Assembly: GCA_965655095.1 (NCBI GenBank)
Contig: OZ296656.1
Span: 10,540,001 to 10,604,000 of the forward strand
Direction: 5' to 3'
From: Haplodiscus bocki
Lineage: Eukaryota
Length of the DNA stretch: 64,000 nt
A program made the position numbers and the translations under genes. Under the pieces are notes generated by a model, which had not been told where the DNA came from, did not search any database, and saw only the letters and a program-made list of their open reading frames with translations. Of the stretch, positions 16,501-39,330 are shown in pieces (the first letter of the stretch is position 1; the number at the start of each line of letters is the position of its first letter).

Positions 16501-16990
16501 GTTGTTTTTCTGTTTGCTAGAGAAATGCTTCTGCGAAATTCTCGTTTCACAGTTCTGGCATGTTGCTTCTCTTTGCCGGCTTTTGTGGTTTGGATTCCAA
16601 TTCGGTACATTGCAAAATCTATATTTTCGGTTTTTGTTTCCCTCTCTTGCGGTTTTATACTGTAGCTGTTTTTCTGGGAAGTTCTTTGTGCTCGTTCTTC
16701 TTGGATTTTTATTTTATGGTTTGTATTATTTGGCCGGGAATTTCTTTTTTTTTGCAGTCGTATGTGATTTGCTGAATATGCTTTAAAGCTTTTAGTTTGT
16801 CTTTCGTGAGCTTGACCCGTATCTTTCTGTCGGTTTTTGATGCTTTGTTTTTTGTGATTAATAACTCTGCTCTGAGGTTTGGAAATTCGGTTTCTCTCTC
16901 TAAAGCTAGTGTTTTCCCTCTGATGTTCCAGTGTCTGCGTATCCGTTTGTTTTCATCAGTTTGTAGCGTCGCTTTCTGGAAATGAATCTA
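13600..16990 (-). mobile_element. Decayed Ty3/Gypsy LTR retrotransposon gag-pol remnant
   Basis: 15708-16166: PLISMDWL...MKQITRPISCHLQK...FASPVVITIRKK (protease end and RT N-terminus). 15230-15445: LGNELDENGINPDK...KTFPGAMDYIAKVPPKL, matching the RT thumb GHxIDxxGIxP...SFLGAIQYxAKFLPKL. Many stops; no LTR pair seen; outer limits approximate. Confidence 0.8.
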
Positions 16991-17049
16991 TTTTTATTCA
17001 CCTTTTCGTCATCATGCAGTCGCAAAAACATCTTACCACTGTAAAACAT

Positions 17050-19471
17050 TACTTTTTTTTCCGTTACACCCAAAGTCTGTCTGAAAATGCGGTGTGTTGA
17101 TATTTCGTCTCAGAAAGTTTATTCTACACATTGGGCGTCCACTAAACAAGAATGTACAATATCTTAAGGTACCAGCAATCCCAAAGCCGTATTGGGAAAC
17201 AATTGATCCGCACCCTCATTTTGTATAAAATGAAACTTCCGTCAGAAAACGCCATGCTTTGGCAAAAGCCTAACCGAAAAAGTGTTTCTAGTCGTCCGAA
17301 CTAAACTAAATATTTTTTGTAGTCTAGCAAGAGGCCAAAAAGTAAATTGGAAGCATTGAAAGGATACTCTTGATTTACGACAAATACAAATGTGTCTGAA
17401 ATTGCTTTTGTTTGCAAATTTATATCGAAAGATCGTTCTAGAGCTCGGGCTTTTACGTGAACAATTGACCCACAAGTCTGAATGGGCCCAAAAACCATAA
17501 TGGAAAATAATTTAGCTCAACTCCAAGAAGTCGGAAAATCAAAGTCCTGAAAATCGTGCGTTTTTTGAAATCATTTCAAGAACGCGATTTAGTTCGAATC
17601 AATCGTTTATTTTACAAGTCGGGGTGATCTCAAAACCATGTTATGAATCACTAACGATAGTCTCATGCTACCTTAAATGCAAAGTCCTTCCCAAATTGCC
17701 GCACCCCACGCATTTTGAAGGAAAATTGGTTACAGTCCTGCTAGCGCAACTAATGATTTCAGGTAATTTTTTAGGCCAGTCGGAAACCACGTTGGGCAAG
17801 CAATTGGACGTGAACTGAGCATATCAACTTAAGACACAAGGTTTCTTTAAAAAATGCAAATCCATGAAATTGATATGAAAATTTCGAACTCAAATATCTA
17901 TTTCTAATTGAAATAAGGTACTGCCTTATCGATTGAGCCCGAAATGTACAGTGACAACAGTCCAAGGTTTGTTTCACGTCAGCTGAAAGCTGGATTTTCT
18001 GCAAAATCCATTCTGTTTCAAAGTCACATCAAAAATTGTTTCAGGTTTTTGAACTGTAATAACCTTTAATGTTCAGCAGCCCATCAATCTGTTCCAAAAC
18101 AGTGAAAGGTTCACTGATAAGGTTCACTGCAAGTCATTCATGAAGTGCCTTTGTTTTTTTAAACGACATCAAAAACGGTGGCTGTATACAACCGTTATCA
18201 ACTGTAAATTTGATGTGAAAAACAGTGCGAGTTCGAAAACAAAACGTCAAACAACGAAATGATTTTTTTACCTAGCCAACTTTCGTTCAGACATCTTTTC
18301 CCGAAAAAGTTTACCATCTTCGAAAAATAAAATTTAGGAAGTGATGTTTGAATCTAAGAATCGAAGAGCAGAAATCCCATCCAAATCTACTCTACTTTTT
18401 GCAAAAACTTGAGCTTCTCGGCCCAGTTTCATTCTATTGACGACAGTGTGTTCAGGACGAACTATCATAAAAGTGGGAAGAGGCCTAGAAAACGTTTTTC
18501 AAACAGCTCCAAAACGAAAAAGAGACATGAACGAGTTTTTTTCTACGAGGCAATGTTTTTCAGCGGTTAGGAAGAATCAATGTCCAAAAAGCGGTTTCCT
18601 GGAAATTTAGCTTTTACATTCCCAACACATTACGAGTGTAAAAATTAGGTGCGTGGAAACAAAATTGCATACTGCTGCTATAGAAGCAAACTTCTGTTTT
18701 AATTTGATCAGCGGGAAATTTGACGAAGCTGAATTGTGTGAAACTGACAAAAAACGTCCACTTGAACTGTGTGAATACAAGAAACAGCGCTGTTCGAACT
18801 TCTGAATGTTCGCCCGCTTTGTTTGAAAATTTATATCGAACCAATCAAATTTCTAATAAAATAAGGGATCCACCAGCTTAAGTTCAAAATTTGAAACTGT
18901 TGATGCGTTGAAATTAAACACTTGAACAAAATTTTCTAGCTGTCGAAAGCAATCATTGTCCAAACAGTGGTTTTCTTGAAAATTAGCCCTACCATTCCCA
19001 ACGCTATTCCAATGTGAAAATTAAGTGCTTCAAAACAGTATTGATTACTGTTGCCACAGAAGCAAGCTGTTGTTTCATTTCGATCTTTGGATTTTTCGAT
19101 GAAAATCAAATGTGTGATGCTAACAACGTTCACTTGATCTGTGAGAATACAAGAAACAGCTTTGTTTGGATTTCCGAAACTTTGCCCATACTGTTTGAAT
19201 TGTCAAATCAGGATAATCAATTATTCAATTTGAATAATTGATCGACAATTGTCAGTTCAGAACCTGAAACTGTTGATGCGTTGAAACAAAATACTGAAAA
19301 AGCTTTGGAAGAGTTTTTGTCAGCTATTTAGTTCTAAGAATTTATTGTGTTTGTTGGCCTTTTTCTACATTCACCTCTAATCTTTCACATCGAAGCTCAT
19401 CAAAAAAAGAGCAGACTTGAATTTTTTGGTTCTGAATGGCGATTTAAGGAATGAAAATTAAGAGACACTTG
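17050..19471. repeat. Outer palindrome X, left arm part A
   Basis: Reverse complement of ~36790-39330 at roughly 85-90% identity, e.g. caatcccaaagccgtattgggaaacaattgatccgcaccctca (17176) vs tgagggtgcggatcaattgtttcccaatacggctttgggattg (39164). Mirrored ORFs 18614- / 37417+, 19014+ / 37025- and 17301- / 38887+. Confidence 0.92.
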
Positions 19472-19589
19472 AGTAGTAGAGTAGTGGGCAGAGCTGACGG
19501 GGGTAGTTGAAGACCCTATGTATTAAGGTAGGCCATAGCGAGCCGAGTCGATCCGAGAGCCGAGAAGGGTCTTCAACCGTAGCCGAGAG

Positions 19590-19782
19590 CTCTCGGGTGA
19601 CGTAATACTCGATTCTGATGGGCTGACGACTCGTGTTACGTATTACTCGAATTTGATTGACTGCCGAGTAATGTAATACTCGATTCTGATTGGCTGACGA
19701 CTCGGGTGACGTAACACTCGATTCTGAATAGCTGACGAAGTTGAGGGGCCTTTTCGTGCTCGATTTTGATTGGCTGACGACT
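19590..19782. repeat. Subterminal ~38-bp repeats containing CCAAT and CRE/ATF-like motifs (mirror copy at 33298-33490)
   Basis: 4-5 units of ctcgggTGACGTAAtactcgattctgATTGGctgacga. Confidence 0.8.
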
Positions 19783-19811
19783 CGAACTGCCGAAATCCGA
19801 GTGTATTCGGC

Positions 19812-21185
19812 TCAATGTATTAAGATGGGGTATAGATCGGCAATGTATTAATATAGGGTGTAATTCGGCTCAATGTATTCACATAGGGAATAGTTCGGCT
19901 CAATGTATTTAGATAGGGTATAGATCGGCAATTTATTAAGATAGGGTGTAATTCGGCTCAGTGTATTAAGATAGGCTATAGTTCGGCTCAAGGTCTTAAG
20001 ATAGGGTATACTTCGTCAATGTATTAAGATAGGGTATAGTTCGGCTCAATGTATTAGGATAGGGTATAGTTGGGCAATGTATTAAGCTGGCAATGCATGT
20101 ATTTAAGATATGGAGCCGAAAGCGGACTCAATGTATTAAGATAGGCAATTCATGTATTAAGATATGGAGCCGACTCAATGTATTAAGATAGGAAATGCAT
20201 GGTGTCGAAAGCCGAATCAATGTATTAAACTAGGTAATGCATGTATCAAGATGGGGATGCATGTATTAAGATAGGCAATAGCATTTTGTAATGTATAAGC
20301 ATAAGCTAGGGCTCGCCTCAATGCTTAAATATATGGAATGACTCATTTTCGGCACTGTGAGACTTTTTCGAGAAATTTTTTTTGAACTTTTTTTCCAGGG
20401 GCCTGCGCGTATAATTATGACGGCACACACTAATTATGACGCCTGAAGTTGATTTTTGTGCCCGCGGATAGTGTTTTGACTTAATGCAATGTGAAAGTGC
20501 ACTTCGGCAGTGTATTAAGATAGGTATATTTTAGTATTGTTTTAAGATGGGGTTTAGTTCGTTAATGTATTAAGATTGGTTATATTTCGGTAACGTATTA
20601 AGATAGGCTATAGTTCGGTAAGGTATCGGGATAGGGTATAGTTCGGATCCATGTATTAAGATAGGGTATAGTTCTGTAATGTATTAAGATTGGTTTTTGT
20701 TCGGTAATGTTTTGAGATAGGGTATAGTTCGGTAATGTATTGAGATAGGGTATAGTTCGGTAATGTATTAAGGTTGAGTAAAGTTCGGGTCAATGTTTTG
20801 AGCAGGGGATAGTTCGGTAATGTATTAAGATTATATACAGTTCGGTAATGTAACAAGATAGGGTATAGTTCGGTAATGTTTTAAGATAGAGTATAGTTCG
20901 GTAATGTATTAAGATAGGGTGTAATTCGGTTCAATGTATTAAGATAGGGTATAGTTCGCTAATGTATTAGGATTGTTTTACACTTCGGTAATGTAATATG
21001 ATAGGGTATAATTCTGTAATGTATTAAGATAGGGTTTATTTCGTCAATGTTTTAAGATAGGGTATAGTTCGGTAATGTATTATGATAGGGTACATTTCGA
21101 CTCAATATTTTAAGATAGGGTATAGTTCGGTAATGTATTAAGATAGGGTATAGTTCGGTAACGTATTAAAATAGGTTATAGCTCG
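19812..21185. repeat. Subterminal 28/30-bp tandem arrays (aatgtattaagatagggtatagttcgg[t/ctc]), left arm: ~19812-20280 and ~20505-21185
   Basis: Dozens of adjacent diverged units with no unique spacers. Confidence 0.95.
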
Positions 21186-24100
21186 GTGACGCCTGCGGAA
21201 CAGTAATTTCGCAGGAAAATCTCAAACAAACGTAAAGATTATAGCAACTTGACTGAGGCAACGGAAATAGAAAAATGGCGAAGAGACTGTAGCCTGTGTT
21301 GTCTATTACAAAAAACCCTATATGGAAAGACAATAAAAGGAAAGACCACCCATGAAAGGAAAGACTAACCATAAAACGAAAAACCGCACGCGCTGTCAAT
21401 CACTCTCTGTTGCGCCCGCGGACACTGTTTTGACCTAATTCTATGTGGAAAGGTTGATTTTATTTTCCAAAATGTTAGTTAGCGAGAGCAAATGCAAACA
21501 AAAGCATTGGATATCCTGCACATTTACATTGATGCAGACTACAAAACGGATGATTTTTCACGCTTACGCCTGTATTGTGCGCCTGCAGGTACTCATTTGC
21601 TATGTCAACACATGTTTGCAACATATTATTAGGAGATTTTGCTAAAAAATTGCGGGTTTGACTGTTGTTTCTTATCCGCGCAAGGTATTGAGAGACAAGC
21701 AAGGACGTCTGTTCATGTAGAAACGTGGGTTTTTACTCCGTTCAATGTAAAATGACGGAGTTTTATAGATAAAGTTTTGTACTGCAACAATTTACGTTCA
21801 ATTAATGTCGCATTTTTTGAACTAGAAAAAGCAATGTACACCGTCGCAACTCCTGTTCCGGTGTTGACTATCATCACTCCTGGTCGTTATACTCACAGTA
21901 AACAATCAGAGATTTTTCATGCTAAATTTAACTTGAAGGTGAATTGTGAGAAAAAATGCGCTACAGCAAGACTTTAAAGCTGTACTTTTGCGTCGAAGAG
22001 TCGCTCAGCTAACAAAAAATGGTTTGAACGCACAGCAACAGAGTCTGCATGACTGTAAGATACCACAACAAATTTGTGAAAGTTGATAAATAACCTGTGT
22101 TTTGAGGCTTTCTTTGGGTTTGTCTACACAAATCATGGAGTTTGAGTACAAGCAAGCATACAAAATGATTGAAACAGGAGTCTTAATTTGAAAATCACAG
22201 ATTATGATGCCATATCAACCTTTTTTGTTTTACTTTGGTAGCAATATGCTTAAAACTGAATGATGAACTCATGTGTCTTACGACTCAATGTCAAAAAATG
22301 CCGAGTGTAAATGCAAGAAGGTGGGCAAAAAGTTGAGGAGACCGGCTCTACACGCTTTCATAATACATTGTGGATCAAAATCGACTTGGATCGCACCACC
22401 TAATACATTGACGGACTCATACATTCGGTTTTTGTTGAAAACTCAATTTTTATCTCAATTTTATGACTCAGACGCCCAAATCCAAACCATATTTTATTAC
22501 TTTACCGAAGTATACCGTCTTAATACATTCGTCGGTAGTCTAGGCTATCTTATTACTTTGCTGAAGTACACCCTGCTTTAATACATTGTTGAACTAAACA
22601 CCAACGAAATCACATTGCTGAGCTATTGCCTATCCTAACACCTTGTTGAGGTACATCCGATCTTATTACATTGCTAAGCAATTCCCAATTTCAAAACATT
22701 GCTGATCTTTACCCAATCCTAACCCATTGTTGGGGATATAGCCAACATTAATACATTGCTGAGCTATAACCTGTTTTAGTACATTGTCGAACTATAATCG
22801 ATCTTAGTGTACTGCTGTCAGCTTTCGCGAAACGTTGTCAACAGCCAATCAGAATCGAGTATTACCTCACCCAATAGCACAATCAAAAATCAACCTAACT
22901 ATATTACAAACAGGCAACCTAATACCTACATGTATGTATTTGGACACAAATTTAAAATCATTGCCATCAAGGGAAGTCCTGTAGACCAATCATCATGCAA
23001 TAGTTTTAGCGAGCTGATTGACGAGTATCAAGTATAAAAAACAGTTCCGTAAGTGGTTGGAAGCGAGAACCGATCAACATACAGCGAGAAAAGCGTGGAG
23101 TGACTACATCGTTATTTGTTTTTTAAATAAATTTAACTTGACCTAGGACAGGAAGCTGCTTCCATATATAGATATTAACCCGACCTACTTGAATTACAGA
23201 GGTAAAGAGTAGTACATTATGTGTCTTACCGGGCATAGTTGTAGAGTCCGGGCACTCAATAGAAGCTACAAAGATTAATGGGTAGATAAAAAGATAACTA
23301 GGGTGAAAATTGCATGAAGGGTGCTCTGTAACTTGTTTTTTGCAGGAGAGTAATTTCCGGCTTTCCAGAGTGGTTAATTGTTCAAAACCACCTGAATGTT
23401 GTAAGCGAAAAGTGCAGTCATGTTTCACCGGTCAATTGAGAAAACTAAAGAAGGAAACCTAGCTAGGTCTGGGAAGTTGTTGAGAAATTGGGACATTGAG
23501 TAAAATGAAGCGTCCCAGTTGAACATCTCGTATACCGTCAGAAAATGCTTCTTCTAGTTTGTGTTCCACAATTTATTCAAGTGATTTTTTTCGTTGCGTT
23601 TGACGGAAGATATTTGAGTAATAGTCGTATAAGAGAAGTTTCTGAAATCGACGTAAAAATTGTAGCAACTTGACTAAAGCAATGAAAAAGAAATAATGGG
23701 GAAAATATGTAGCAGGTGTTACTCATTACTTTATATCAGATATGGATTGTCCAAAAAAGGAAAGACCAACCATGAGAAGAGCTGTCAATCATTTTCTTTC
23801 ATTTTAAAAACGGACTATTTACATTTAAAAACTGGCTAAAAAGATGAAAGTGCTTGTCTATGAAACAACTCAAGTGGAACAAGTTCCCCTTGTATGGTGA
23901 CAGACTGTCTGGGAAAATTATTCACCGGATTAACATCGCATACAGAGTGTCTGAGAAAATGACTTAAGAGGAACAAAGTCCCCTGATAAGGCGACAGGTT
24001 GTCTGGAGAAATTACTCTGAACAAATGACTGAAAAACAAAATAGTGTTAAAACTTGCACCAAGTCTCCAAATAAGGAATCACCTTCCATGTATGGAAATC

Positions 24101-24349
24101 GTTGTAGCTTTGACCAAAAAAAAGGTTGTCCATATAAAGCAGGTATGAATCGGTTAAAATCAAATAAAAGCAGCTACTTGCCACTCTGCAAAATCATTTT
24201 CTGAATATCGTTTCCAACAACAGCAACTCGCTTTTCCAGCGACGAACGTACCCAAACAGTGGTGAAATTTCTCATCAATACCTGCTTATGATCAGAATTC
24301 AGTGCTCGAATTTGTCGAAATTGAATAACTGTTCCCTTTACAAGAAGTG

Positions 24350-25024
24350 ATGTGCAGCTACAATAAAACCCAAGTCTCTCCTTATGATCCTACAAAGCTT
24401 GCAATTCATTCTATTTGGCGTGCAGAAGATGATCTTATATCAAATTGTGGCCAGATTTTAAAAAAGACTGTTTCTTTCGATGACAATGTGCGCTTCATTA
24501 ATGAGGAGGACATCGTAACCTATGGAGATTTTGATTGTGGTTTTACTTTCAACCCTGAAACTCCTACGAAAATCAGAGAGACCAACCGAGAACGGAATTA
24601 CATTTCCAGATCCTCTTAAAAATCCAACTGCATTCCCAGTAACGATCGGCATAACTGTTTTATTGATGAGCAGCAGGACTCTAATATCTTTCTGAACCCG
24701 TACAATTTATGGGACATGGTTCCAGCAGCTCTTATGTCATTCAATCTTACTAATGATAGATACTCTATGTCCAATCAGTAGCCTCAACCAATAACTCACC
24801 AACCTAGAACAGACTCATATCCGGTGTTCTCTTCATTGCGAAGGATGGACAGTCAAAAGAAGGGATTGCGCGTCAGCTTTGCATTCTTTCAACGAAAATA
24901 CCTACCAGACGGACGAGTGAACGAAACTGTTAATACGATTGAAGAGTTGAGTGATATCTGGAAACGCGGAGCGAGGGATGGAGTTTCGCCGTTTGTGATG
25001 AACTGTAATTGTATTTAAGTGTAG
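24350..25024 (+). pseudogene. Disrupted copy of a 224-aa ORF of unknown function (left arm of Y)
   Basis: ATG at 24350; in-frame stops at 24617, 24779 and 25016; terminal TAG at 25022. The mirror copy has sense codons at all three positions. Confidence 0.65.
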
Positions 25025-25770
25025 CCATTTGTTTCACTTGTTTGATTTCTATTGTTTGCTTGTGGAATATTTTTTTTTCAAAAAATTACTTTTTTTTGTT
25101 CCCTTTGATGACTTTGAGTGAGAAGTAAAACTTCATCGATAACTTCTATGTAAGGTAACATTCCCTTAGGCAGCCGAAGCCGCAACCCATCTTAGTACAT
25201 TGCAGAAGTTCACCCTAGCGTAATACATAGATGCACACCCTCCTCGCCCACCACTCTCTATAACCTACTTCAATACTTGATCAGTTCGGTTCTCTGCCTG
25301 ATCATAGGACATCACGTCATCATAAATGAGTCACTGAAATCAGACTACTTTTCTCTGTACGTTGCAAACCTCATAGTCGCTAGTTGAACCTTGTTAAATA
25401 GCATTCCTTATCTACGTAAATCGATGAACCAACTCGGATCGGATTGGCTGTCTTAATACGTCTTGTTACGTTGATCACAGTTGGGGTACACAAAGCCTAT
25501 CCTAACAGAATAACTTGACTGATTGAACCCAAACCATACATCAAAACAGTACCGAAACATGCCCTCTTTTGATGAAGGAAAATTTGGCAAACTGCAGAAG
25601 AAGTACACTCAAAATCTGACACGTTGTCAAATTTTGAACTCAAAATCTGACGCGTTGTATTTTTTTAAATTCAAAATCTGACGCGTTGTATCTTTTTCAA
25701 TTCAAAATCATGCTTTTTAAAAAAGCAGGAAAAATGCAAAATATGTCGTTGTCACGAAGTAAAAAGAACC

Positions 25771-26530
25771 TACACTCTGTATTAAGATAGGGTATGGTTC
25801 GATTCAATGTATTATTATAGACCATAGTTCAACAATGTACTAAGGTAGGGTATAGCTCAGCCATGTAATAGCAGAGGGTATACGTTAGCAATGTTATAAG
25901 ATGGGGAACAGCTCACCAATATAACAAGATAGGTAATACGTCAGCAATGTTTCAAAATTGGGAGCTTTTCAGCATTGTAATGAGACAAGGTTTACGTCAG
26001 CAATGTTTCAAGATTGGGAACATCTCAGCAATGTAAAAAGACAAGGTGTACGTCACGAAAGTTTTAAGATTGGGAATAGCTCGGCAATGTAATAAGACAG
26101 AGTGCACCTCAACAATGTGTTAAGATTAGGTATGGCTCACCGATGCAAAAAAAGTTGGAATTACTCCGCAAGGTAATAAGATTGGAATTGCCTCAACAAT
26201 GTGTTAGGATTGGGCATAGCCATGCAATGTTTTAAGGTAGACTATACCACAACAATGTATTAATGCTGGGTAAAGCTCAACAGGGTAATAATGTAGCGTA
26301 TACCTCAGCAAAGTGATAAGATTGCGTACACTCCCCATCAGTGTATTAAGACAGGGTATGTTTCCACAATGTAACAATGTATGGTATGGATTTGCGTTCC
26401 CGAGTCCTTAACTTGAGATAAGTTTAAGCTTTCGGCAAAAACCGAGTGCATAAGACCGTCAAGGTATTATGATGTGCGATCCGAGCTGGTTTTGTTCGGA
26501 AATGCATTGTGATAGCGTGTAGAGCCAGAC
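25771..26530. repeat. Older, diverged relic of the same subterminal array family inside the Y spacer
   Basis: Degenerate aatgtattaagatagggtatagctcagc units, then a unique block (26380-26525, atggatttgcgttcccgagtc...agcgtgtagagcc) about 70% similar to 30650-30795. Confidence 0.7.
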
Positions 26531-27149
26531 CGTGCAGACACCAAAAAACGGTGAAACATCCTTGAAGCTGAGAAGGTCGTACACTTATGCATCAAAGTAT
26601 GCTTTAATTCAGCAGTTCAAGGGACCACTACGCATTTAAGGTATGTTTTAAGCCACACATGTCTTGAAATTCGATTTTCGATGAAGCATTGTTAGTTTTG
26701 ATAAGTGTCAAGATTGTGGTAGGTAAAGTCCCGCAGCCAATAATGGGTAGATGCTCTGTAGGTGACAGTTTCTTTCAATCGCTCTCCTTCTTGTTGCTCA
26801 CACAAAAACATTGGAAAAAATGGAGGGAATTCGAACTAAAGAGCGTTATCTTTTGTTTTCACAAAAGTGTATTCTGAGAAACACTGCTGATTTGGTATAT
26901 TTTATGCTCCACAGTGTTCTGTCTGTAACTTCTGTGAAAATTGTGTGTCGTCATAATGCTACTCCTCACACATTGAGAGACGAATTGACATGTGGCAGCT
27001 TCCATTTGTCGATCTGGCGACTAACTCTATACCACGCATTGTCTTTTAATTCCCCTCTTTAAACTAATTTGGTAACAAAGTTGACAGAAGATATCATCAT
27101 TCATTCAGAAACTGAAAAACAAGATAAAAATCAGATTTGGGAGAAATAG

Positions 27150-27522
27150 TTTTAAAACTTGTCAGATTTTGAATTGAAATTTTTACAACGCGTCAGATTT
27201 TGATTTGAAGTTTATACAACGCGTCAGATTTTGGATTGGAAAAAAATACAACGCGTTAGATTCTGAATAGAAAATTTTTCGACATGTCAGATTTTGAAAA
27301 AATTTTGCATCCAAAAAAATCACGTTTTTGGTTCTTTTTACTTCGTGAAAACGACATATTTTGCATTTTTCGTGCTTTTTTAAAAAGCACGATTTTGAAT
27401 TTAAGAAAATACAACGCGTCAGATTTTGAATTTGAAAAAATACAGCGCGTCAGATTTTGAATTTAAAAAAATACAACGCATCATGTTTTGAATTTCAAAA
27501 AATACAACGCGTCAGATTTTGA
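27150..27522. repeat. ~31-bp tandem repeat (tacaacgcgtcagattttgaatttaaaaaaa); truncated mirror copy at 25608-25770
   Basis: Repeated units are visible directly. The inner breakpoint of the Y arms (27330) lies inside this block. Confidence 0.85.
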
Positions 27523-28112
27523 GTGTACTTCTTCTGCAGTTTGCCAAATTTTCCTTCATTCACCAAAAGAGGGCATGTTTCGGTAATGTTTTGATGTATG
27601 GTCTGCATTCAATCAGTCAAGATATTCTGTTAGGATAGGCTTTGTGTACCCCAACTGTGATCAACGTAACAAGACGTATTAAGACAGCCAATCCGATCCG
27701 AGTTGGTTCATCGATTTACGTAGATAAGGAATGCTATTTAACAAGGTTCAACTAGCGACTATGAGGTTTGCAACGTACAGAGAAAAGTAGTCTGATTTCA
27801 GTGACTCATTTATGATGACGTGATGTCCTATGATCAGGCAGAGAACCGAACTGATCAAGTATTGAAGTAGGTTATAGAGAGTGGTGGACGAGGAGGGTGT
27901 GCACCTATGTATTACGCTAGGGTGAACTTCTGCAATGTACTAAGATAGGTTGCGGCATCGGCTGCCTAAGGGACTGTTACCTTACATAGAAGTTATCGAT
28001 GAAGTTTTAATTCTCACTCAGAGTCATCAAAGGGAACAAAAAAGTATTTTTTTGGAAAAAAAACAAATATTCCACAAGCAAACAATAGAAATCAAACAAG
28101 TGAAACAAATGG

Positions 28113-28787
28113 CTACACTTGAATACAATTACAGTTCATCACAAACGGCGGAACTACATCCATCGCTCCGGGTTTCCACATATCACTCAACTCTTCAATC
28201 GTATTAACAGTTTCGTTCACTCGTCCGTCTGGTAGGTAATTTCGTTGAAAGAATGCAAAGCTGACGCGCAATCCCTTCTTTTGACTGTCCATCCTTCGCA
28301 ATGAAGAGAACACCGGATATGAGTCTGTTCTAGGTTTGTGAGTTATTGGTTCAGGGTACTGATTGGACATAGAGTATCTATCATTAGTAAGGTTGAATGA
28401 CATAAGAGCTGCTGGAACCATGTCCCAAAAATTGTACGGGTTCAGAAAGATGTTAGAGTTATGCTGCTCATCAATAAAACAGTTATGCTGATCGTTACTG
28501 GGAATGCAATTGGATTTTTCACAGGATCTGGAAATGTAATTCCGTTCTCGGTTGGTCTCTCTGATTTTCGTAGGAGTTTCAGGGTTGAAAGTAAAACCAC
28601 AATCAAAATCTCCATAGGTTACGATGTCCTCCTCATTAATGAAGCGCACATTGTCATCGAAAGAAACAGTCTTTTTTAAATTCTGGCCACAATTTCATAT
28701 AAGATCATCTTCTGCACGCAAAATAGAATGAATTGCAAGCTTTGTAGGATCATAAGGAGAGACTTGGGTTTTTTTGTAGCTGCACAT
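28113..28787 (-). pseudogene. Second copy of the 224-aa ORF (right arm of Y), single stop at codon 31
   Basis: ATG at 28787. TGA at 28697-28695 where the left copy has TCA. The rest is open to the TAG at 28113 (track ORF 28113..28649). Confidence 0.65.
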
Positions 28788-31700
28788 CACTTCTTGTAAA
28801 GGGAACAGTTATTCAATTTCGACAAGTTCGAGCACTGAATTCTGATCGTAAGCAGATATTGATGAGAAACTTCACCACTGTTTGGGTACGTTCGTAGCTG
28901 GAAAAGCGAGTTGCTGTTGTTGGGAACGATATTCAAAGAATGATTTTGCAGAGTACTAAGTTGCTGCTTTTACATGATTTTAACCGATTCATAACTGCTT
29001 TATATGGACAACCTTTCCTTTTTTGGTCAAAGCTACAACGCTTTCCATACATGGAAGGTGATTCCTTATTTGGGGACTTGGTGCAAGTTTTAACACTATT
29101 TTGTTTTTCAGTCATTTGTTCAGAGTAATTTATCCAGACAACCTGTCGCCTTATCAGGGGACTTTGTTCCTCTTAAGTCATTTTCTCAGACACTCTGTAT
29201 GCGATGTTAATCCCGTGAATAATTTTCCCAGACAGTCTGTCACCATAAAAGGGGAACTTGTTCCACTTGAGTTGTTTCACAGACAAGCACTTTCATCTTT
29301 ATAGCCAGTTTTTAAATGTAAATAGTCCGTTTTTAAAATGAAAGAAAACGACTGACAGCTCTTCTCATGGTTGGTCTTTCCTTTTTTGGACATTCCATAT
29401 CTGATATAAAGTAATGAGTAACACCTGCTACATATTTTCCCCATTATTTCTTTTTCATTGCTTTAGTCAAGTTGCTACAATTTTTACGTCGATTTCAGAA
29501 ACTTCTCTTATACGACTATTACTCAAATATCTTCCGTCAAACGCAACGAAAAAATCACTTGAATAAATTGTGGAACACAAACTAGAAGAAGCATTTTCTG
29601 ACGGTATACGAGATGTTCAACTGGGACGCTTCATTTTACTCAATGTCCCAATTTCTCAACAACTTCCCAGACCTAGCTAGGTTTCCTTCTTTAGTTTTCT
29701 CAATTGACCGGTGAAACATGACTGCACTTTTCGCTTACAACATTCAGGTGGTTTTGAACAATTAACCACTCTGGAAAGCCGGAAATTACTCTCCTGCAAA
29801 AAACAAGTTACAGAGCACCCTTCATGCAATTTTCACCCTAGTTATCTTTTTATCTACCCATTAATCTTTGTAGCTTCTATTGAGTGCCCGGACTCTACAA
29901 CTATGCCCGGTAAGACACATAATGTACTACTCTTTACCTCTGTAATTCAAGTAGGTCGGGTTAATATCTATATATGGAAGCAGCTTCCTGTCCTAGGTCA
30001 AGTTAAATTTATTTAAAAAACAAATAACGATGTAGTCACTCCACGCTTTTCTCGCTGTATGTTGATCGGTTCTCGCTTCCAACCACTTACGGAACTGTTT
30101 TTTATACTTGATACTCGTCAATCAGCTCGCTAAAACTATTGCATGATGATTGGTCTACAGGACTTCCCTTGATGGCAATGATTTTAAATTTGTGTCCAAA
30201 TACATACATGTAGGTATTAGGTTGCCTGTTTGTAATATAGTTAGGTTGATTTTTGATTGTGCTATTGGGTGAGGTAATACTCGATTCTGATTGGCTGTTG
30301 ACAACGTTTCGCGAAAGCTGACAGCAGTACACTAAGATCGATTATAGTTCGACAATGTACTAAAACAGGTTATAGCTCAGCAATGTATTAATGTTGGCTA
30401 TATCCCCAACAATGGGTTAGGATTGGGTAAAGATCAGCAATGTTTTGAAATTGGGAATTGCTTAGCAATGTAATAAGATCGGGTGCACCTCAACAAGGTG
30501 TTAGGATAGGCAATAGCTCAGCAATGTGATTTCGTTGGTGTTTAGTTCAACAATGTATTAAAGCAGGGTGTACTTCAGCAAAGTAATAAGATAGCCTAGA
30601 CTACCCACGAATGTATTAAGACGGTATACTTCGGTAATGTAATAAAATATGGTTTGGATTTGGGCGTCTGAGTCATAAAATTGAGATAAAAATTGAGTTT
30701 TCAACAAAAACCGAATGTATGAGTCAGTCAATGTATTAGGAGGTGCGATCCAAGTCGATTTTGATCCACAATGTATTATGAAAGCGTGTAGAGCCGGTCT
30801 CCTCAACTTTTTGCCCACCTTCTTGCATTTACACTCGGCATTTTTTGACAATGAGTCGTAAGACACATGAGTTCATCATTCAGTTTTAAGCATATTGCTA
30901 CCAAAGTAAAACAAAAAAGGTTGATATGGCATCATAATCTGTGATTTTCAAATTAAGACTCCTGTTTCAATCATTTTGTATGCTTGCTTGTACTCAAACT
31001 CCATGATTTGTGTAGACAAACCCAAAGAAAGCCTCAAAACACAGGTTATTTATCAACTTTCACAAATTTGTTGTGGTATCTTACAGTCATGCAGACTCTG
31101 TTGCTGTGCGTTCAAACCATTTTTTGTTAGCTGAGCGACTCTTCGACGCAAAAGTACAGCTTTAAAGTCTTGCTGTAGCGCATTTTTTCTCACAATTCAC
31201 CTTCAAGTTAAATTCAGCATGAAAAATCTCTGATTGTTTACTGTGAGTATAACGACCAGGAGTGATGATAGTCAACACCGGAACAGGAGTTGCGACGGTG
31301 TACATTGCTTTTTCTAGTTCAAAAAATGCGACATTAATTAAACGTAAATTGTTGCAGTACAAAACTTTATCTATAAAACTCCGTCATTTTACATTGAACG
31401 GAGTAAAAACCCACGTTTCTACATGAACAGACGTCCTTGCTTGTCTCTCAATACCTTGCGCGGATAAGAAACAACAGTCAAACCCGGAATTTTTTTAGCA
31501 AAATCTCTTAATAATATGTTGCAAACATGTGTTGACATAGCAAATGAGTACCTGCAGGCGCACAATACAGGCGTAAGCGTGAAAAATCATCCGTTTTGTA
31601 GTCTGCATCAATGTAAATGTGCAGGATATACAATGCTTTTGTTTGCATTTGCTCTCGCTAACTAACATTTTGGAAAATAAAATCAACCTTTCCACCTAGA

Positions 31701-31954
31701 ATTAGGTCAAAACAGTGTCCGCGGGCGCAACAGAGAGTGATTGACAGCGCGTGCGGTTTTTCGTTTTATGGTTAGTCTTTCCTTTCATGGGTGGTCTTTC
31801 CTTTTATTGTCTTTCCACATAGGGTTTTTTGTAATAGACAACACAGGCTACAGTCTCTTCGCCATTTTTCTATTTCCGTTGCCTCAGTCAAGTTGCTATA
31901 ATCTTTACGTTTGTTTGAGATTTTCCTGCGAAATTACTGTTCCGCAGGCGTCAC

Positions 31955-33275
31955 CGAGCTATAACCTATTTTAATACGTTACCGAACTATACCCTATCTT
32001 AATACATTACCGAACTATACCCTATCTTAATACATTACCGAACTATACCCTATCTTAAAATATTGAGTCGAAATGTACCCTATCTTAATACATTACCGAA
32101 CTATACCCTATCTTAAAACATTGACGAAATATACCGTATCTTATTACATTACCGAATTATACCCTATCATTTTACATTACCGAAGTGTAAAACAATCCTA
32201 ATACATTACCGAACTATACCCTATCTTAATACATTGAACCGAATTACACCCTATATTAATACATTACCTAACTATACCTTATCTTAATACATTACCGAAC
32301 TATACCCTATCTTGTTACATTACCGAACTGTTTATAATCTTAATACATTAACGAACTATCCTCTGCTCAATACATTAACCCGAACTATGCCCAACCTTAA
32401 TACATTTCCGAACTATACCCTATCTCAATACATTACCGAACTATACCCTATCTCAATACCTTACCGAACAATAACCAATCTCAATACATTACAGAACTAT
32501 ACCCTATCTTAATACAGGGATCCGAACTATACCCTATCCTGATACCTTATCGAACTATAGCCTATCTTAATACATTATCGAATTATAACCAATCCTAATA
32601 CATTAACGAACTAAACCCTATCTTAAAACAATACTAAATTATACCCTATCTTAATACACTGTCGAAGTGCATTTTCACATTGCATTAAGTCAAAACACTA
32701 TCCGCGGGCACAAAAATTAACTGCAGGCGTCATAATTAGTGTGTGCCGTCATAATTATACGCGCAGGCCCCTGGAAAAAAAGTTCAAAAAAATTTTCTCG
32801 AAAAAGTCTTACAGTGCCGAAAATGAGTCATTCCATATCTTTATGCATTGAGACGAGCCCTAGCCTATGCTTATACATTACAAAATGCTATTGCCTATCT
32901 TAATACATGCATCCCCATCTTAATACATGCATTACCTATTTTAATACATTGATTCGGCTTTCGACACCATGCATTTCCTATCTTAATACATTGAGTCGGC
33001 TCCATATCTTAATACATGAATTGCCTATCTTATTACATTGAGTCGGCTTTCGGCTCCATGTCTTAAATACATGCATTGCCAGCTTAATACATTGCGCAAC
33101 TATACCCTATCCTAATACATTGAGCCGAACTATACCCTATCTTGATACATTGACGAAGTATACCCTATCTTCATTATTTAAGCCGAACTATAGCCTATCT
33201 TAATACATTGAGCCGAATTACACCCTATCTTAATACATTGCCGATCTATACCCTATCTTAATACATTGAGCCGAA
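31955..33275. repeat. Subterminal 28/30-bp tandem arrays, right arm of Y (ccgaactataccctatcttaatacatt)
   Basis: Mirror of 19812-21185 with copy-number differences. Confidence 0.95.
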
Positions 33276-33615
33276 TACACTCGGATTTCGGCAGTCCGAG
33301 TCGTCAGCCAAATAAAAGCGAGCACGAAAAGGCCCTTCAACTTCGTCAGCCAATCAGAATCGAGTGTTACGTCACCCGAGTCGTCAGCCAATCAGAAGCG
33401 AGTATTACATCACTCGGCAGCCAATCAAATTCGAGTATTACGTAACACGAGTCGTCAGCCAATCAGAATCGAGTATTACGTCACCCGAGAGCTCTCGGAT
33501 ACGGTTGAAGACCCTTCTCGGCTCTCGGATCGACTCGGCTCGCTATAGCCTATCTTAATACATAGGGTCTTCAACTAACCCCGTCAGCTCTGCTCACTAC
33601 TCTACTACTCACCTG

Positions 33616-34307
33616 GCTTCGAGAAACCATAAATCAAGAAATTTAAAAAACCCGCTCCAGTTAAAACGCTGCTTATTGATACTTTACGTTAAGTGTTTGT
33701 CTGGATGCTTCAATCAACAGAATTTCAAGCTTCACTTGGAACAATGAACTGTCTGGACTGTCCCGTTTGTTTTCTGCTCTCCAATACCAAATGAAAGGAG
33801 GCTTCTTGATTCTGTTTGGGATTTGAGTCCGCAGTTGTATCTGAACTGAAAAACTCTTCAAAGTTTCTAAAGGTAGTGTATTTCAGCGGGTAAGAAAGCA
33901 ATGAACCATGCAAATTTTGGGCAAGGCAGCAAGTGTATGCCATAGCGCTTAGTTTGGGACGCTCTTTGCAAACCTCTCAACTTTCGTAGCGTGCAGAGAA
34001 GAATGTGTAGACTTGCACTGGCAACCATCCACTCTAGCCTACTTCTGCGTCGCCAACTTGGCTGAGGTAGATTTTTCCCATGCAATATTAGCATTCGCAG
34101 TAACGCAGCAGGCAAATTTTGGGTTTTCTTCTTAAATACATATTCGCGCAAGTTTTAACACGTTTTACATTGCGCATCACAGATTCATTCTTTTGAAAAT
34201 GAACTAAAAGTCAGTTTGAACTGAGCGGGCAGAATAAAGCGTGACTAAATGATTGTTTTTTCTGCAGACGCTAGTTGTCTTTTTCAGGAACTTTCGATTC
34301 AAGTCTG
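33616..34307. repeat. Outer palindrome X, left arm part B (continuation after the Y insertion)
   Basis: Reverse complement of 36100-36785. Mirrored ORFs 33867- / 36257+ and 33725- / 36465+. Arm symmetry ends at ...gattcaagtctg (34307) / cagacttgaatc (36100). Confidence 0.92.
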
Positions 34308-36099
34308 ACGGTTTTTCATTTGGACAGAAACAATATGAACAGATACTTGTTCACCGAGCCAAAGTTCAACACTCCGGAAATAAGGGATCCTCTCATGCCA
34401 GCTACATAATTGGCTTTACTGAGATTGAAACACTGTTTCTTGTTTTTAATCCAAGATGATTTCGTTGCTTGAAACCAGGTAGATAGTCAGGCATAAGTGC
34501 TTATGATTACAAAGAGTGTCCCTCAGTTCTATAGCCTGACGCTCCTTAAAATCACTTGCGTTTCATTGCCATTTTTTCTCATATTCAAGGTTTCTGTTCT
34601 GTGGGAAAATTTTAGCAACTAAGCAAAGTTGGAAACAGCCATTGCTCGTTATATTTTTTGTTGTCAGGCACATTTGCCCCACTCTTTTCCAGTTACCTCA
34701 CAAGATGAGTCAGATCGAGGATCGGGATTGTGCAATGTTTGTTTTTCAACATTGCTCAGCTAACATCAAAGCGTCTGCACAGGGCTCAAGTTGAAAATTC
34801 AAGGAATCACCTTCACGAAATCAGTGTTTGTAGTGGAAGCACGTAAACAAAATTTTTCAACCGCTCGACTGACGGAAGTTTTGATTGGATCAATCCATTG
34901 GAATGATCCTCAATTGATTTCGCTTTGAAAACATTTCAAAATTATGGCAATTGAACAACTGCAAATCGTTCCAATTTGTTGAAAAAGATTTTCAACAATA
35001 CTTCATCTTGACTATTCCGTACTGAAGAAGGACCTTCTACATTAAGCACACTACTTCTCTTTGCCCACAATATATAATGTATTCAAATGTAGATCTTTGT
35101 TCCTGCAATTGCTAAAGGTGGCATTTTTCAGCAGGCAAATGTCACAAATGTCACTAAGCAATTCTATTCACTCTGCTATCGATAATACGTTGAGGATCGC
35201 TTCCAAGGCGTTCACTTTGTGGTCGTTCAAGAGTGCTGCAGTCAAAATTTTGCCGTTCCAATCAGCCATATTTGCACAAAGTGATGCAAAGTCATCAAGA
35301 CGCTGACAATCGTTGACGCCTCCTACAGCAATCACTTTTTGAAAAGCTCTGATCAAAACTTCATCAAATCAAAAATTATTAATTCTTTCATTCACTAGAA
35401 ATCTCTAATCAATGTTTCTTGCAATCAGCATTGCGCATCTCCGCTTCTTGATTGTGCAGGTTTCCTGTTGTGATGGCCGGAAGTTGTTACCCATCATCTT
35501 TTGCTACAGAGTCAGCTTTGAATCGCCAATCGGATGAGTACTTGATCAAGAGAAGTGGAACCAGCAGCTCTTACCAGTTACAAAAGAGTCGAAATCAGTC
35601 TCGATGTTTTCCTGCTGAACTTGGGTCCCGTGAAAAACAACGCCACCGAATATTCCACTTTTTATGTGCTAACAGCAAGACGCTCAATTTCAGGCTCCGC
35701 ATTGGCAAAATGAACCAACTGATAGTGATTCTAGAATCAAACCGAGCATTTTGGTTCCATGAGTCTACATTAAACAACGCTGTCAGATAGGTATCGATTG
35801 TTATTGGATAGATTGGGGAAACTTCTCACATAATATGTGATGTGGCAAAATTCTCGAAACATTTTTTCCTCTATTCGTTCTACCGTAGTTGTTTTTGATT
35901 TCTCAGAAGCTTGTGTTGTTTCGGGAAATTGTAAAACTGTTCACATAGTCTAATTTTGTACAAATGCTTGTGGTATCAGTGAAATCCGTCGAGACCAATC
36001 ACACACAATGCTCCACTCAAAGCTCAATTCACGTTTTCTTTCGGTCGTGGGAACATAAAGCAATGAACTTGAATTGCCGTAATCACTCATAGTGGGGCC

Positions 36100-39000: not shown

Positions 39001-39330
39001 TGTTTCGTAAATCAAGACTATCTTTTCATTGCTTCCAAATTACTTTTTGGCCTCTTGCTAGACTACATAAAATATTTTGTTTAGTTCGGATGACTAGAAA
39101 CACCTCGGTTAGGATTTTGCGAAGGCATGGCGTTTTCTGAAAGTAGTTTGATTTTATACAAACTGAGGGTGCGGATCAATTGTTTCCCAATACGGCTTTG
39201 GGATTGCCGGTATTTTAACATATTGTACGTTCTTGTTTAGTGAACGCACAATGTGTAGATTAGACTTTCTGAGAAGAAATATCAACACACTGAATTTTCC
39301 GACACACTTTGGGTTTAACGGAAAAAAATG
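36100..39330. repeat. Outer palindrome X, uninterrupted right arm
   Basis: Continuous reverse complement of (17050-19471)+(33616-34307). Carries an extra ~115-130-bp tandem unit at ~38180-38300 that the left arm lacks. Confidence 0.92.

What the first reader, a model, noticed from the sequence alone, without database searches (positions are those of the whole stretch)
19472..33609. 14-kb 'snap-back' Polinton/Maverick derivative: almost entirely palindromic, with 6.3-kb inverted arms and no core genes
Seen: AGTAGT...ACTACT termini, a 6-bp TSD (CACTTG/CACCTG), arms 19472-25770 and 27330-33609, and a 1.56-kb spacer. The empty target site survives in the paralogous X arm. Established: AG/AGT-repeat termini with 6-bp TSDs are the signature of Polintons, whose TIRs are usually hundreds of bp to ~1 kb and which replicate by protein priming through panhandle intermediates. 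Inference: this is a defective genome analogous to copy-back/snap-back defective-interfering virus genomes. One end would have been recopied far into the interior by template switching, and the product integrated using a helper's integrase. This would be a class of non-autonomous, DI-like Polinton parasites that keeps only origins and accessory DNA.
Basis: partly seen in the sequence, partly recalled or inferred. Interest (0 to 1): 0.88.

Follow-up and report, generated by a model that had tools for sequence, protein, structure and literature searches.

The report
Palindromic non-autonomous Maverick/Polinton copy
This 14-kb insertion is an almost perfect inverted repeat of one end of a virus-like Maverick/Polinton transposon, and it is one old, dead copy of a large family in the same genome in which this two-armed layout is the rule, which leaves a sequence trace of how such elements may copy themselves.

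Summary
Window 19472-33609 is a 14.1-kb near-palindrome with arms 97.4% alike. It has AGTAGTAG tips, a 6-bp target duplication (CACTTG/CACCTG) and a surviving empty site (CCCTTG, 36786-36791).

The Maverick/Polinton assignment is supported. The end motif and duplication length fit published vertebrate Mavericks. In the same assembly, homologous tips lie beside a packaging-ATPase gene (Pfam Pox_A32) and beside an ORF that reads like a family-B polymerase.

The palindrome is not a one-off. Six of eleven related copies are palindromes, five sit on contigs that end near the centre, and none is a monomer. Every fully seen centre differs. The window's "spacer" is the inner part of the longer right arm and ends in a degenerate remnant of the element's other end. 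Each arm carries a conserved 222-aa ORF (over 1,100 variants, dN/dS about 0.4). Both window copies are broken by stops.

Arm-to-arm divergence roughly equals copy-to-copy divergence. This favours insertion as a palindrome during one burst, followed by central deletion and gene conversion.

The copy-back origin remains an inference. One relative (L002) shows a palindrome that formed in the chromosome.

Verdict: a new variant of a known kind, of moderately high interest.

The parts
19466..19471 (.). Left copy of the 6-bp target-site duplication (CACTTG)
   Evidence: The empty paralogous site has one CCCTTG.
19472..33609 (.). Whole element, 14,138 bp: a non-autonomous Maverick/Polinton-family inverted dimer
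19472..25770 (+). Left (short) arm, 6,299 bp, read from the tip inward
   Evidence: One search shows it leaves the family sequence exactly after 25770.
25771..33609 (-). Right (long) arm, 7,839 bp, read from the tip at 33609 inward. It includes what the finding called the spacer.
   Evidence: Window 26407-27328 is arm sequence in L001 (both arms), L002, L004 and L005. Window 25778-26400 matches the inner arrays of L002, L005, L009 and L010.
25771..27329 (-). The 'spacer': the unduplicated inner part of the long arm. 25778-26400 is a degenerate 28/56-bp array whose 14-nt motif points opposite to the right arm's subterminal arrays, and is a remnant of the element's second end. 26407-27329 is unique arm sequence with 31-bp repeats.
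19472..19502 (+). Left tip (starts AGTAGTAG)
   Evidence: The tip is conserved in L001, L003, L006, L007, L008, L009 and L012.
33579..33609 (-). Right tip, 1 mismatch to the left tip
19506..19577 (+). Conserved 12-bp stem (element positions 35-46 and 95-106) enclosing the first copy of the 14-nt motif. The mirror copy is at 33504-33575.
   Evidence: 93.6% of cells paired, 4 pairs with compensatory changes, 0 of 500 shuffles reach this, slid controls give 39-57%.
19592..21187 (+). Left subterminal repeat region: 38-bp repeats, then 30-, 21- and 28-bp arrays. It holds 23 of the 24 same-orientation copies of TGTATTAAGATAGG (1 mismatch allowed) in the left arm's outer 1.7 kb; the first, at 19519, lies inside the terminal stem.
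31953..33489 (-). Right subterminal repeat region, mirror of the left (23 of that arm's 24 motif copies; the other, at 33549, lies inside the terminal stem)
24350..25018 (+). Left copy of the family's 222-aa ORF, a pseudogene: 2 premature stops, no frameshift
   Evidence: counts and outer bounds only.
28119..28787 (-). Right copy of the 222-aa ORF, a pseudogene: 1 premature stop, no frameshift. The 178-aa ORF at 28113-28649 is its longest open stretch.
21243..23641 (.). Tract where the two arms are 99-100% alike (partner 29499-31897), read as arm-to-arm gene conversion
33610..33615 (.). Right copy of the target-site duplication (CACCTG)
36786..36791 (-). Empty target site (CCCTTG on the minus strand) in the uninterrupted right arm of the older inverted repeat X
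17050..39332 (.). Host structure X. It is an older inverted repeat with arms 17050-19471 plus 33614-34307 against 36100-39332 (85-92% alike) and a spacer at 34308-36099. The element sits in its left arm.

Best explanation
This is an old, inactive copy of an abundant non-autonomous Maverick/Polinton-family element.

The integrating unit is an inverted dimer of one element end. Two identical functional tips (T1: AGTAGTAG, a conserved 12-bp stem, then about 1.7 kb of motif arrays) face outward. Each arm carries one 222-aa ORF. The degenerate remnant of the other end (T2) lies at the centre.

Shown:
- The copy entered the left arm of an older inverted repeat as one unit bounded by two T1 tips, with a 6-bp duplication.
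- It has no replication or integration genes.
- Relatives with the same tips carry a Pox_A32-type packaging ATPase ORF.
- The palindromic layout is the rule for the gene-poor members.
- In the burst subfamily, arms are about as diverged from each other as separate copies are from each other.

Inferred:
- Integration was done in trans by the integrase of a gene-bearing relative.
- The palindromic architecture arose when a roughly 8-kb internal-deletion derivative with a defective T2 end folded back, or was copied back, at that end. This gave a molecule with two good T1 ends.
- After insertion, the unstable centre lost the inner 1.5 kb of the left arm plus the outer part of the T2 remnant. This created the 25770|25771 junction.
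- Arm-to-arm conversion then re-homogenised 21243-23641.
- Point decay put stops in both ORF copies.
For: Unit insertion:
- Tips, target duplication and empty site.
- A second palindromic copy, L008, has a 5/6 matching 6-bp duplication, CCTTGG/TCTTGG.

Family assignment:
- The end motif and 6-bp duplication are as published for vertebrate Mavericks (PMC8097293).
- In L006, a homologous tip and the first 5.6 kb of the arm (including the 222-aa ORF) are followed 3.5 kb later by a Pox_A32 ORF. It scores E=3e-9, 37 bits, above the 22.8-bit cut-off.
- In L003, a near-identical tip is followed after about 700 bp by the end of a called 745-aa ORF. Its tail shows the three palm motifs of family-B polymerases in order (read from memory of the motifs).

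Palindrome is family-wide:
- Palindromic copies: window, L001, L002, L008, L009, L012.
- Contigs that end 2.0-2.9 kb after the ORF: L004, L005, L007, L010, L011.
- No monomer with flank after the inner end was seen.

Centre is a T2 remnant: the inner ends of L002 and L009 align with T1 positions of about 93-170 and are followed by arrays in inverse orientation.

Short arm is a copy right to the tip: the window's two tips are 94.7% alike. The central arrays are only 65-73% like the T1 arrays.

Timing: p-distances in three segments show a star-like pattern.
- L001 arm-to-arm: 4.5-5.8%.
- L001 to L008 or to the window: 3.5-6.7%.
- Window arm-to-arm: 0-4.1%.
This dates the palindromes to the insertion burst.

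The ORF is real: 7 of 7 fetched full-length copies are intact, dN/dS is 0.19-0.77, and there are 1112 homologues.
Against: - No second locus with the window's own junction was found. The closest ORF relatives (the 90% cluster of P0001: L001, L008, L009) all have other centres.
- L002 is palindromic for 695 bp beyond its tips, and its flanking hexamers are inverted rather than direct. This can only have arisen in the chromosome or in the assembly.
- L001 has no target duplication.
- L009's arms belong to different subfamilies over part of their length (15.9% apart). Recombination among copies therefore blurs the history.
- No integrase was seen in any relative.
- The polymerase reading has no profile support. 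Pfam and PDB sequence searches were blank.
- The full gene-bearing element and its two ends were never seen whole.
- The 222-aa protein has no recognisable family or fold.
Confidence: 0.55

Rival explanations
1. Strict copy-back reading. Every palindromic copy is a fresh defective genome. It is made when the strand-displacing protein-primed polymerase, or a resected free end, switched back on its own product at a copy-specific point. The product was then integrated. On this view 25770|25771 is the original switch junction and the 1.56-kb loop is primary.
For: - Five fully seen copies have five different turnarounds, with loops of 13, 42, 1029, 1169 and 1559 nt. This holds even among copies of one burst.
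- L001 turns round exactly at a short natural hairpin that occurs once in the window near 26407-26437.
- A phage polymerase of the same protein-primed, strand-displacing kind makes mostly 'inverted sequences with intervening deletions' in vitro (PMC1855051).
Against: - A palindromic template should hand its centre on to its progeny, yet no shared centre was seen.
- Long perfect palindromes are expected to lose their centres after insertion, which gives the same picture.
- Nearly symmetric central loss, as in L001, can also come from hairpin bypass during host replication.
- There is no evidence here for any extrachromosomal form.
Confidence: 0.22
2. In-situ origin. An ordinary monomer with short terminal repeats inserted here. 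The long arms then grew in the chromosome by fold-back or break-induced copying from one end, primed by the terminal repeat.
For: - L002 proves that chromosomal (or assembly-level) inverted duplication happens in this family, because its palindrome includes 695 bp of flank on each side at 99.5% identity.
- The window's junction is unique so far.
- The host region is itself an inverted repeat (X), so this genome tolerates or makes such structures.
Against: - The left arm matches the right arm at 94-96% right to the tip. The T2-type sequence that should have stayed at that end is only 65-85% like T1.
- Arm divergence matches copy-to-copy divergence instead of being younger.
- No monomer was seen among 11 copies.
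- Both target-duplication copies and precise tips are intact in the window and in L008.
Confidence: 0.15
3. It is not a Maverick/Polinton at all. It is a Foldback-like or other cut-and-paste transposon with long repeat-rich terminal inverted repeats, and its likeness to Polinton ends is coincidental.
For: - Long arms rich in short tandem repeats recall Foldback elements (from memory).
- There is no polymerase, integrase or capsid gene in the element.
- The polymerase-like ORF in L003 has no profile hit.
Against: - A 6-bp duplication together with the (AGT)2 end motif is the published Maverick signature.
- A Pox_A32-type ATPase ORF follows the shared 5.6 kb of arm in L006.
- No transposase domain was found in any ORF of the arms.
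Confidence: 0.05
4. Assembly artefact: a fold-back chimeric read or a mis-join created the palindrome.
For: Five related contigs end near palindrome centres, which shows the assembler struggles with these structures.
Against: - The arms differ by 163 substitutions and 11 indels.
- The loop is asymmetric.
- There is a target duplication and an empty paralogous site.
- The element lies mid-contig in a 277-kb contig.
Confidence: 0.02

Closest known systems
Maverick/Polinton elements, vertebrate type with (AGT)2//(ACT)2 ends (PMC8097293; Kapitonov and Jurka 2006 as cited there)
   Same: The end motif, the 6-bp target duplication and terminal inverted repeats are shared. Relatives in the same genome carry a Pox_A32-type packaging ATPase and a polymerase-like ORF next to homologous tips.
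   Different: Published intact vertebrate elements are 12.7-24.6 kb with terminal repeats of 46-1,447 bp and eight core genes. This copy has 6.3-kb arms (about 8 kb in the fullest relative, L009), no core gene, and both ends derived from one end.
Ordinary non-autonomous (internal-deletion) Polinton derivatives as catalogued in repeat libraries (from memory)
   Same: Tips and subterminal DNA are kept and core genes are lost. Helper enzymes are presumed to act on it.
   Different: Those keep two short ends around a deletion. Here the unit is an inverted dimer, and the second end is reduced to a central remnant.
Snap-back / long-inverted-repeat defective genomes of adenovirus incomplete particles (Daniell 1976, cited in PMC12090768, not read here), and palindromic or hairpin deletion derivatives of protein-primed linear yeast plasmids (from memory)
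   Same: One genome end, with its repeated cis signals, is present at both termini of a shortened, gene-poor molecule. The parent replicon is protein-primed and has inverted terminal repeats.
   Different: Those are extrachromosomal molecules seen in particles or cells. This is an integrated genomic family with target duplications. No free form, packaging or interference has been shown.
Inverted chimeras made by the strand-displacing phage phi29 polymerase (PMC1855051)
   Same: The product type is the same: an inverted copy joined to its template with an intervening deletion. That matches loops of 13-1559 nt.
   Different: That is an in-vitro artefact of a phage enzyme. It is only a mechanistic precedent.
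Foldback (FB) transposons of Drosophila and similar long-inverted-repeat elements (from memory)
   Same: Very long inverted arms partly built of short tandem repeats, with little or no coding capacity.
   Different: FB elements make 9-bp duplications and are tied to a Mutator-like transposase (from memory). Here the duplication is 6 bp, the ends are Maverick-type, and most of each arm is unique sequence with an ORF.
Large chromosomal palindromes kept alike by arm-to-arm gene conversion (e.g. sex-chromosome palindromes; from memory)
   Same: Patchy near-identity between arms (21243-23641 at 99-100% against 95-96% elsewhere). The centre is asymmetric.
   Different: Those are host segments without tips or target duplications and are not mobile.

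Membership tests
Maverick/Polinton | 6-bp target-site duplication | tested here: met
   CACTTG/CACCTG against the empty site CCCTTG. L008 has CCTTGG/TCTTGG. L001 lacks one and L002 has inverted flanks.
Maverick/Polinton | 5'-AG...CT-3' ends, here the (AGT)2//(ACT)2 motif | tested here: met
   The motif is as described in PMC8097293.
Maverick/Polinton | Terminal inverted repeats | tested here: met
   Present but extreme: 6.3-kb arms against 46-1,447 bp in published intact vertebrate elements.
Maverick/Polinton | [quoted passage not shown] | tested here: inconclusive
   Absent from the window element and from the whole window (local tblastn). In relative L003, an ORF tail next to a homologous tip shows the three palm motifs in order by my reading. 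Pfam and PDB sequence searches found nothing.
Maverick/Polinton | Retroviral-type (rve) integrase | tested here: not met
   None in the element or in the parts of relatives that were visible. The only rve hit (L006 3081-3923) lies outside the element and has the LTR-retrotransposon domain set. Full-length relatives were not seen, so this speaks to this copy and not to the family.
Maverick/Polinton | FtsK/A32-type packaging ATPase | tested here: met
   Not in the window copy. It is present in relative L006 at 14140-14901, with Pox_A32 E=3.2e-9 and 37.1 bits against a cut-off of 22.8. L006 shares the tip and 5.6 kb of arm.
Maverick/Polinton | Jelly-roll capsid proteins and adenain-type protease | tested here: not met
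   No hit in any ORF scanned. The 222-aa protein could not be folded (pLDDT 33), so a small capsid-like fold cannot be excluded.
Copy-back / snap-back defective genome | Both termini derive from the same end of the parent | tested here: met
   Both tips are T1. A remnant of the other end lies at the centre.
Copy-back / snap-back defective genome | Large inverted duplication around a unique loop, with replication genes missing | tested here: met
Copy-back / snap-back defective genome | Arises repeatedly with different switch points | tested here: inconclusive
   Five copies have five centres. Central decay after insertion would give the same result.
Copy-back / snap-back defective genome | Replicates only with a helper and interferes with it | not testable with these tools
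   No sequence-based test exists.
Foldback (FB) transposons | 9-bp target duplication and arms made almost wholly of tandem repeats | tested here: not met
   The duplication is 6 bp. Only the outer 1.7 kb of each arm is repeat arrays.

The most novel reading that the evidence does not exclude
Maverick/Polinton elements of this host pass through a free linear, protein-primed replicative stage. In that stage, copy-back or end fold-back repeatedly produces one-end inverted dimers. These defective genomes, which keep two good ends, the motif arrays and one small gene, are then integrated by a helper's integrase. They have out-multiplied ordinary monomeric derivatives. This would make them a class of integrated, defective-interfering-like parasites of a virus-like transposon, and their centres would be fossil records of individual template switches.
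Probability: 0.3. Interest if true: 0.8.

Novelty: new variant of a known kind. Interest (0 to 1): 0.6.

Why it matters
How Mavericks/Polintons replicate in animal cells has only been inferred from their gene content. Here a large family appears to have a successful form that is an inverted dimer of one end, with a remnant of the other end at the centre. A linear, end-initiated replicon would leave this kind of by-product, and no cut-and-paste transposon is expected to.

If a genome-wide census confirms it, the family gives a purely sequence-based handle on that question. The switch points, arm ages and target sites of hundreds of copies could all be read.

It also matters practically:
- These roughly 14-16-kb near-perfect palindromes break long-read contigs.
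- They can seed chromosomal inverted duplications, as in L002.
- They would be mis-annotated by tools that expect short terminal repeats.

The conserved 12-bp terminal stem with compensatory changes, and the roughly 24 same-orientation 14-nt motifs per arm, are candidate cis signals.

Tried and rejected
Searches that found nothing:
1. Pfam scans found no domain in 36 ORFs of the arm and spacer, in 20 other window ORFs (apart from one GT61 host ORF), or in small ORFs of the relatives.
2. Rfam and tRNA scans of the window were blank.
3. The function of the 222-aa protein could not be found. Pfam, PHROGs and a PDB profile search were blank. The AlphaFold model from 42 sequences has pLDDT 33 and is unusable, so no fold search was run. 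The search of 1.84 billion representatives gave 475 clusters, all short and unannotated.
4. The 132-aa ORF called in several relatives has dN/dS of 0.55-1.3, so I do not count it as a gene.
5. A local tblastn of the polymerase-like tail against the window and five loci found nothing.
6. The flanks of L002/L003 and the window's X arms match no other fetched locus, so there is no shared target element.

A PDB sequence search with it had gone out in the same batch and found nothing.
8. Daniell 1976 could not be read.
9. Literature searches found no description of palindromic Polinton derivatives. This is absence in the held library only.

Deliberately not done:
10. I did not scan the viral or metagenome collections with the tip pattern, because of the bar on fetching animal viruses by pattern.

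Ideas dropped:
- That the spacer is foreign DNA. It is arm sequence in the relatives.
- That the L006 unit is a head-to-tail concatemer of a complete element. It has no second tip, and the repeat boundary lies in flank DNA.
Full report
**1. The observation**

The window holds a real 14,138-bp near-palindrome at 19472-33609.
- A chain of inverted pairs runs from the tips to 25770 and 27330, with 1559 nt between.
- Aligned end to end, the arms show 6045 matches, 163 mismatches and 11 indel events, i.e. 97.4% identity.
- Identity is uneven. It is 94-96% over the outer 1.7 kb and inner 2 kb, and 99-100% over 21243-23641.
- The 31-nt tip that starts AGTAGTAG occurs only at the two ends of the element.
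- The flanking hexamers are CACTTG and CACCTG.
- The element interrupts the left arm of an older inverted repeat, X. Its arms are 17050-19471 plus 33614-34307 against 36100-39332, 85-92% alike.
- The uninterrupted right arm of X reads through the site with a single CCCTTG at 36786-36791.

So a discrete unit bounded by two identical tips entered here and duplicated 6 bp. An assembly fold-back is excluded by the arm differences, the asymmetric centre and the mid-contig position.

**2. Where the window comes from**

The host ORF at 45316-45972 (Glyco_transf_61) is found, residue for residue, on ENA ERZ26859043 contig ctg87285_77.90x_l, which is 276,979 bp long. Every relative described below comes from the same assembly, so the comparisons are within one data set and probably one genome. 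I could not name the host. Flanks of relatives carry an EGF_CA ORF and LTR-retrotransposon genes.

**3. Content of the element**

Thirty-six ORFs of 45 aa or more from one arm plus the centre give no Pfam hit of note. There is no Rfam family or tRNA.

Cis features of each arm, outermost first:
- The tip.
- A 12-bp stem at element positions 35-46 and 95-106, enclosing one copy of the 14-nt motif TGTATTAAGATAGG.
- 38-bp repeats.
- Arrays of 30-, 21- and 28-bp units that bring the motif count to 24 per arm, all in one orientation relative to the tip.

Across 12 tips from 9 loci the stem is paired in 93.6% of cells. Four pairs carry compensatory double changes. None of 500 shuffles reaches this, and slid controls give 39-57%. 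These sequences are related, so the changes may stem from only about three events.

**4. A conserved gene after all**

The 178-aa ORF at 28113-28649 has 1112 homologues. Most are 222 aa long, 74-90% identical, and all come from this ENA sample.
- Seven of seven full-length copies read from fetched loci are intact.
- Pairwise dN/dS is 0.19-0.77, mostly about 0.4, at dS up to 0.32.
- A full HMMER pass over 1.84 billion representatives finds 475 clusters down to about 37% identity. All are short and none is annotated.
- Pfam, PHROGs, a PDB profile search and AlphaFold (pLDDT 33) say nothing about function.

In the window the gene is broken in both arms. The left copy (24350-25018) has two premature stops. 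The right copy (28119-28787) has one. Neither has a frameshift.

**5. Family assignment**

The end motif and 6-bp duplication are those reported for vertebrate Mavericks. Their intact members are 12.7-24.6 kb with terminal repeats of 46-1,447 bp (PMC8097293).

In the same assembly:
- **L006** carries a homologous tip and the first 5.6 kb of the arm, including the 222-aa ORF. It then diverges into a region with a Pox_A32-type packaging ATPase ORF, above Pfam's cut-off.
- **L003** has a near-identical tip at position 1785. About 700 bp later comes the end of a called 745-aa ORF. Its visible 355-aa tail shows, in order, what I recognise from memory as motif B, motif C and the KxY motif of family-B polymerases.

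The polymerase reading is a lead and not a test. No integrase, capsid or protease gene was seen in the parts of relatives that I could reach.

**6. The palindrome is the family's normal state**

Eleven gene-poor copies were reached through the ORF. Six are palindromic:

| Copy | Arms | Loop / spacer | Notes |
|---|---|---|---|
| Window | 6.3 kb | 1559 nt | |
| L001 | about 6.9 kb | 13 nt | Placed on a short natural hairpin that occurs once in the window near 26407-26437 |
| L002 | about 7 kb | 1169 nt | |
| L008 | about 4.9 kb | 1029 nt | 6-bp duplication CCTTGG/TCTTGG |
| L009 | about 8.0 kb | 42 nt | |
| L012 | 78-91% alike | about 2.9 kb | Lineage only 50% identical in the ORF |

Five more copies (L004, L005, L007, L010, L011) sit on contigs that stop 2.0-2.9 kb after the ORF, inside or next to the central repeat arrays. 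That is what near-perfect palindromes do to an assembler. None of the eleven is a monomer that runs from an inner end into host flank.

**7. What the 'spacer' is**

Window 26407-27328 is ordinary arm sequence in L001 (both arms), L002, L004 and L005. Window 25778-26400 corresponds to the inner arrays of L002, L005, L009 and L010. The left arm leaves the family sequence exactly after 25770.

So the right arm is the long arm (33609 back to 25771) and the left arm is a truncated copy.

The inner end of the long arm is a degenerate second end. Its arrays carry the 14-nt motif in the opposite orientation. In L002 and L009 they are followed by a stretch that aligns with T1 positions of about 93-170, but the outermost 90 nt or so are missing.

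The fullest form (L009) therefore reads: T1, body, T2 remnant, short loop, T2 remnant, body, T1. This is an inverted dimer of a roughly 8-kb internal-deletion derivative.

**8. When and where the palindromes formed**

In three segments the window, L001 and L008 form a star.
- L001's arms differ by 4.5-5.8%.
- L001 differs from L008 and from the window by 3.5-6.7%.
- The window's arms differ by 0-4.1%. The zero lies in the tract I read as gene conversion.

Arms as old as the burst argue that the copies were palindromic when they inserted.

A second argument concerns the window's left tip region. It is 94.7% like the right one, whereas T2-type sequence is only 65-85% like T1. The short arm is therefore a copy of the long arm right to its tip, and is not an original second end extended inward.

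Against a purely extrachromosomal story:
- L002's palindrome continues 695 bp into both flanks at 99.5% identity, with inverted flanking hexamers.
- L001 has no duplication.
- L009's arms belong to different subfamilies over part of their length.

Chromosomal rearrangement and recombination among copies clearly also act on this family.

**9. Mechanism, with its status**

Shown:
- Unit insertion with a 6-bp duplication.
- Two T1 ends.
- A central T2 remnant.
- A family-wide palindromic layout.
- Burst-age arms.
- A conserved ORF.
- An ATPase-bearing relative.

Inferred:
- A helper integrase acted in trans.
- The inverted dimer arose by fold-back or copy-back at the defective T2 end of a linear form. 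This restored two working ends.

That inference has two precedents. One is the behaviour of a protein-primed, strand-displacing phage polymerase in vitro, where over 85% of chimeras are inverted sequences with intervening deletions (PMC1855051). The other, recalled from memory, is the adenovirus incomplete-particle genomes and palindromic derivatives of linear yeast plasmids. PMC12090768 cites the Daniell 1976 adenovirus paper, which I could not read.

I cannot tell whether each copy's centre is a primary switch point or a later central deletion. Both predict copy-specific centres.

For the window, I favour insertion as a palindrome followed by central loss, conversion of 21243-23641 and point decay.

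**10. Comparison and novelty**

It works like a one-end, snap-back defective genome, and it sits in the Maverick/Polinton family by its ends, duplication length and relatives. It lacks every core gene, and its arms are about four times longer than the longest published terminal repeats.

I found no description of palindromic Polinton derivatives in the held literature. That is not proof of absence.

I rate it a new variant of a known kind.

Noticed in passing
window 17050-19471 + 33614-34307 versus 36100-39332 (spacer 34308-36099): The host site is itself an older inverted repeat, X. It has about 3.2-kb arms that are 85-92% alike, and both outer ends start with a similar T-rich sequence. No matching flanking duplication and no protein-domain hit were found.
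   Followed up: partly
window 43397-44530: A long tandem array of a 25-bp unit, with more than 36 copies at 97-99% identity. It creates spurious ORFs of 270-341 aa in all six frames.
   Followed up: no
window 45316-45972 (+): A single open 218-aa stretch with a Glyco_transf_61 domain (E=1e-14), probably a host exon. Its exact match placed the window on ENA ERZ26859043 contig ctg87285_77.90x_l.
   Followed up: yes
window 5339-5352: One isolated perfect copy of the 14-nt subterminal motif TGTATTAAGATAGG lies far outside the element. It may be a fragment of another family member or a chance match.
   Followed up: no
element tips: window 19506-19517/19566-19577, and the same positions in L001, L002, L003, L006-L009 and L012: A 12-bp stem just inside the tip is kept through compensatory changes in at least three sequence variants. 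It is a candidate DNA hairpin or dimeric binding site.
   Followed up: yes
L002 4762-5456 and L003 4669-5359 (both flanks of one element on ctg82319): The palindrome runs 695 bp beyond the element tips into host DNA at 99.5% identity. The flanking hexamers are inverted (TTGCCT / AGGCAA) and not direct. This is a chromosomal inverted duplication or an assembly effect.
   Followed up: partly
L006 4017-16426 and 16427-20669: A 12.41-kb tandem duplication contains 1.2 kb of flank plus the left 11.2 kb of an ATPase-bearing relative. A Ty3/gypsy-type integrase ORF set (Integrase_H2C2, rve, SH3_Tf2-1) lies just upstream at 1956-3923.
   Followed up: partly
L009 8969-10401 versus 16479-17942: The two arms of this palindrome differ by 12-16% here and group with different subfamilies. 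Elsewhere they are 99-100% alike. This mosaic implies recombination or ectopic conversion among copies.
   Followed up: partly
contig ends of L004, L005, L007, L010, L011 (and L012): Five contigs stop 2.0-2.9 kb after the 222-aa ORF, in or near the central arrays, and L012's contig stops inside its right arm. Coverage tags in contig names fall mostly at about 29-48x, with two (L004's contig and the window's) at about 78-80x. This hints at haplotigs against collapsed regions.
   Followed up: no
L011 11005-12660: A 1.65-kb insertion inside the arm carries a 225-aa ORF with no domain on record.
   Followed up: no
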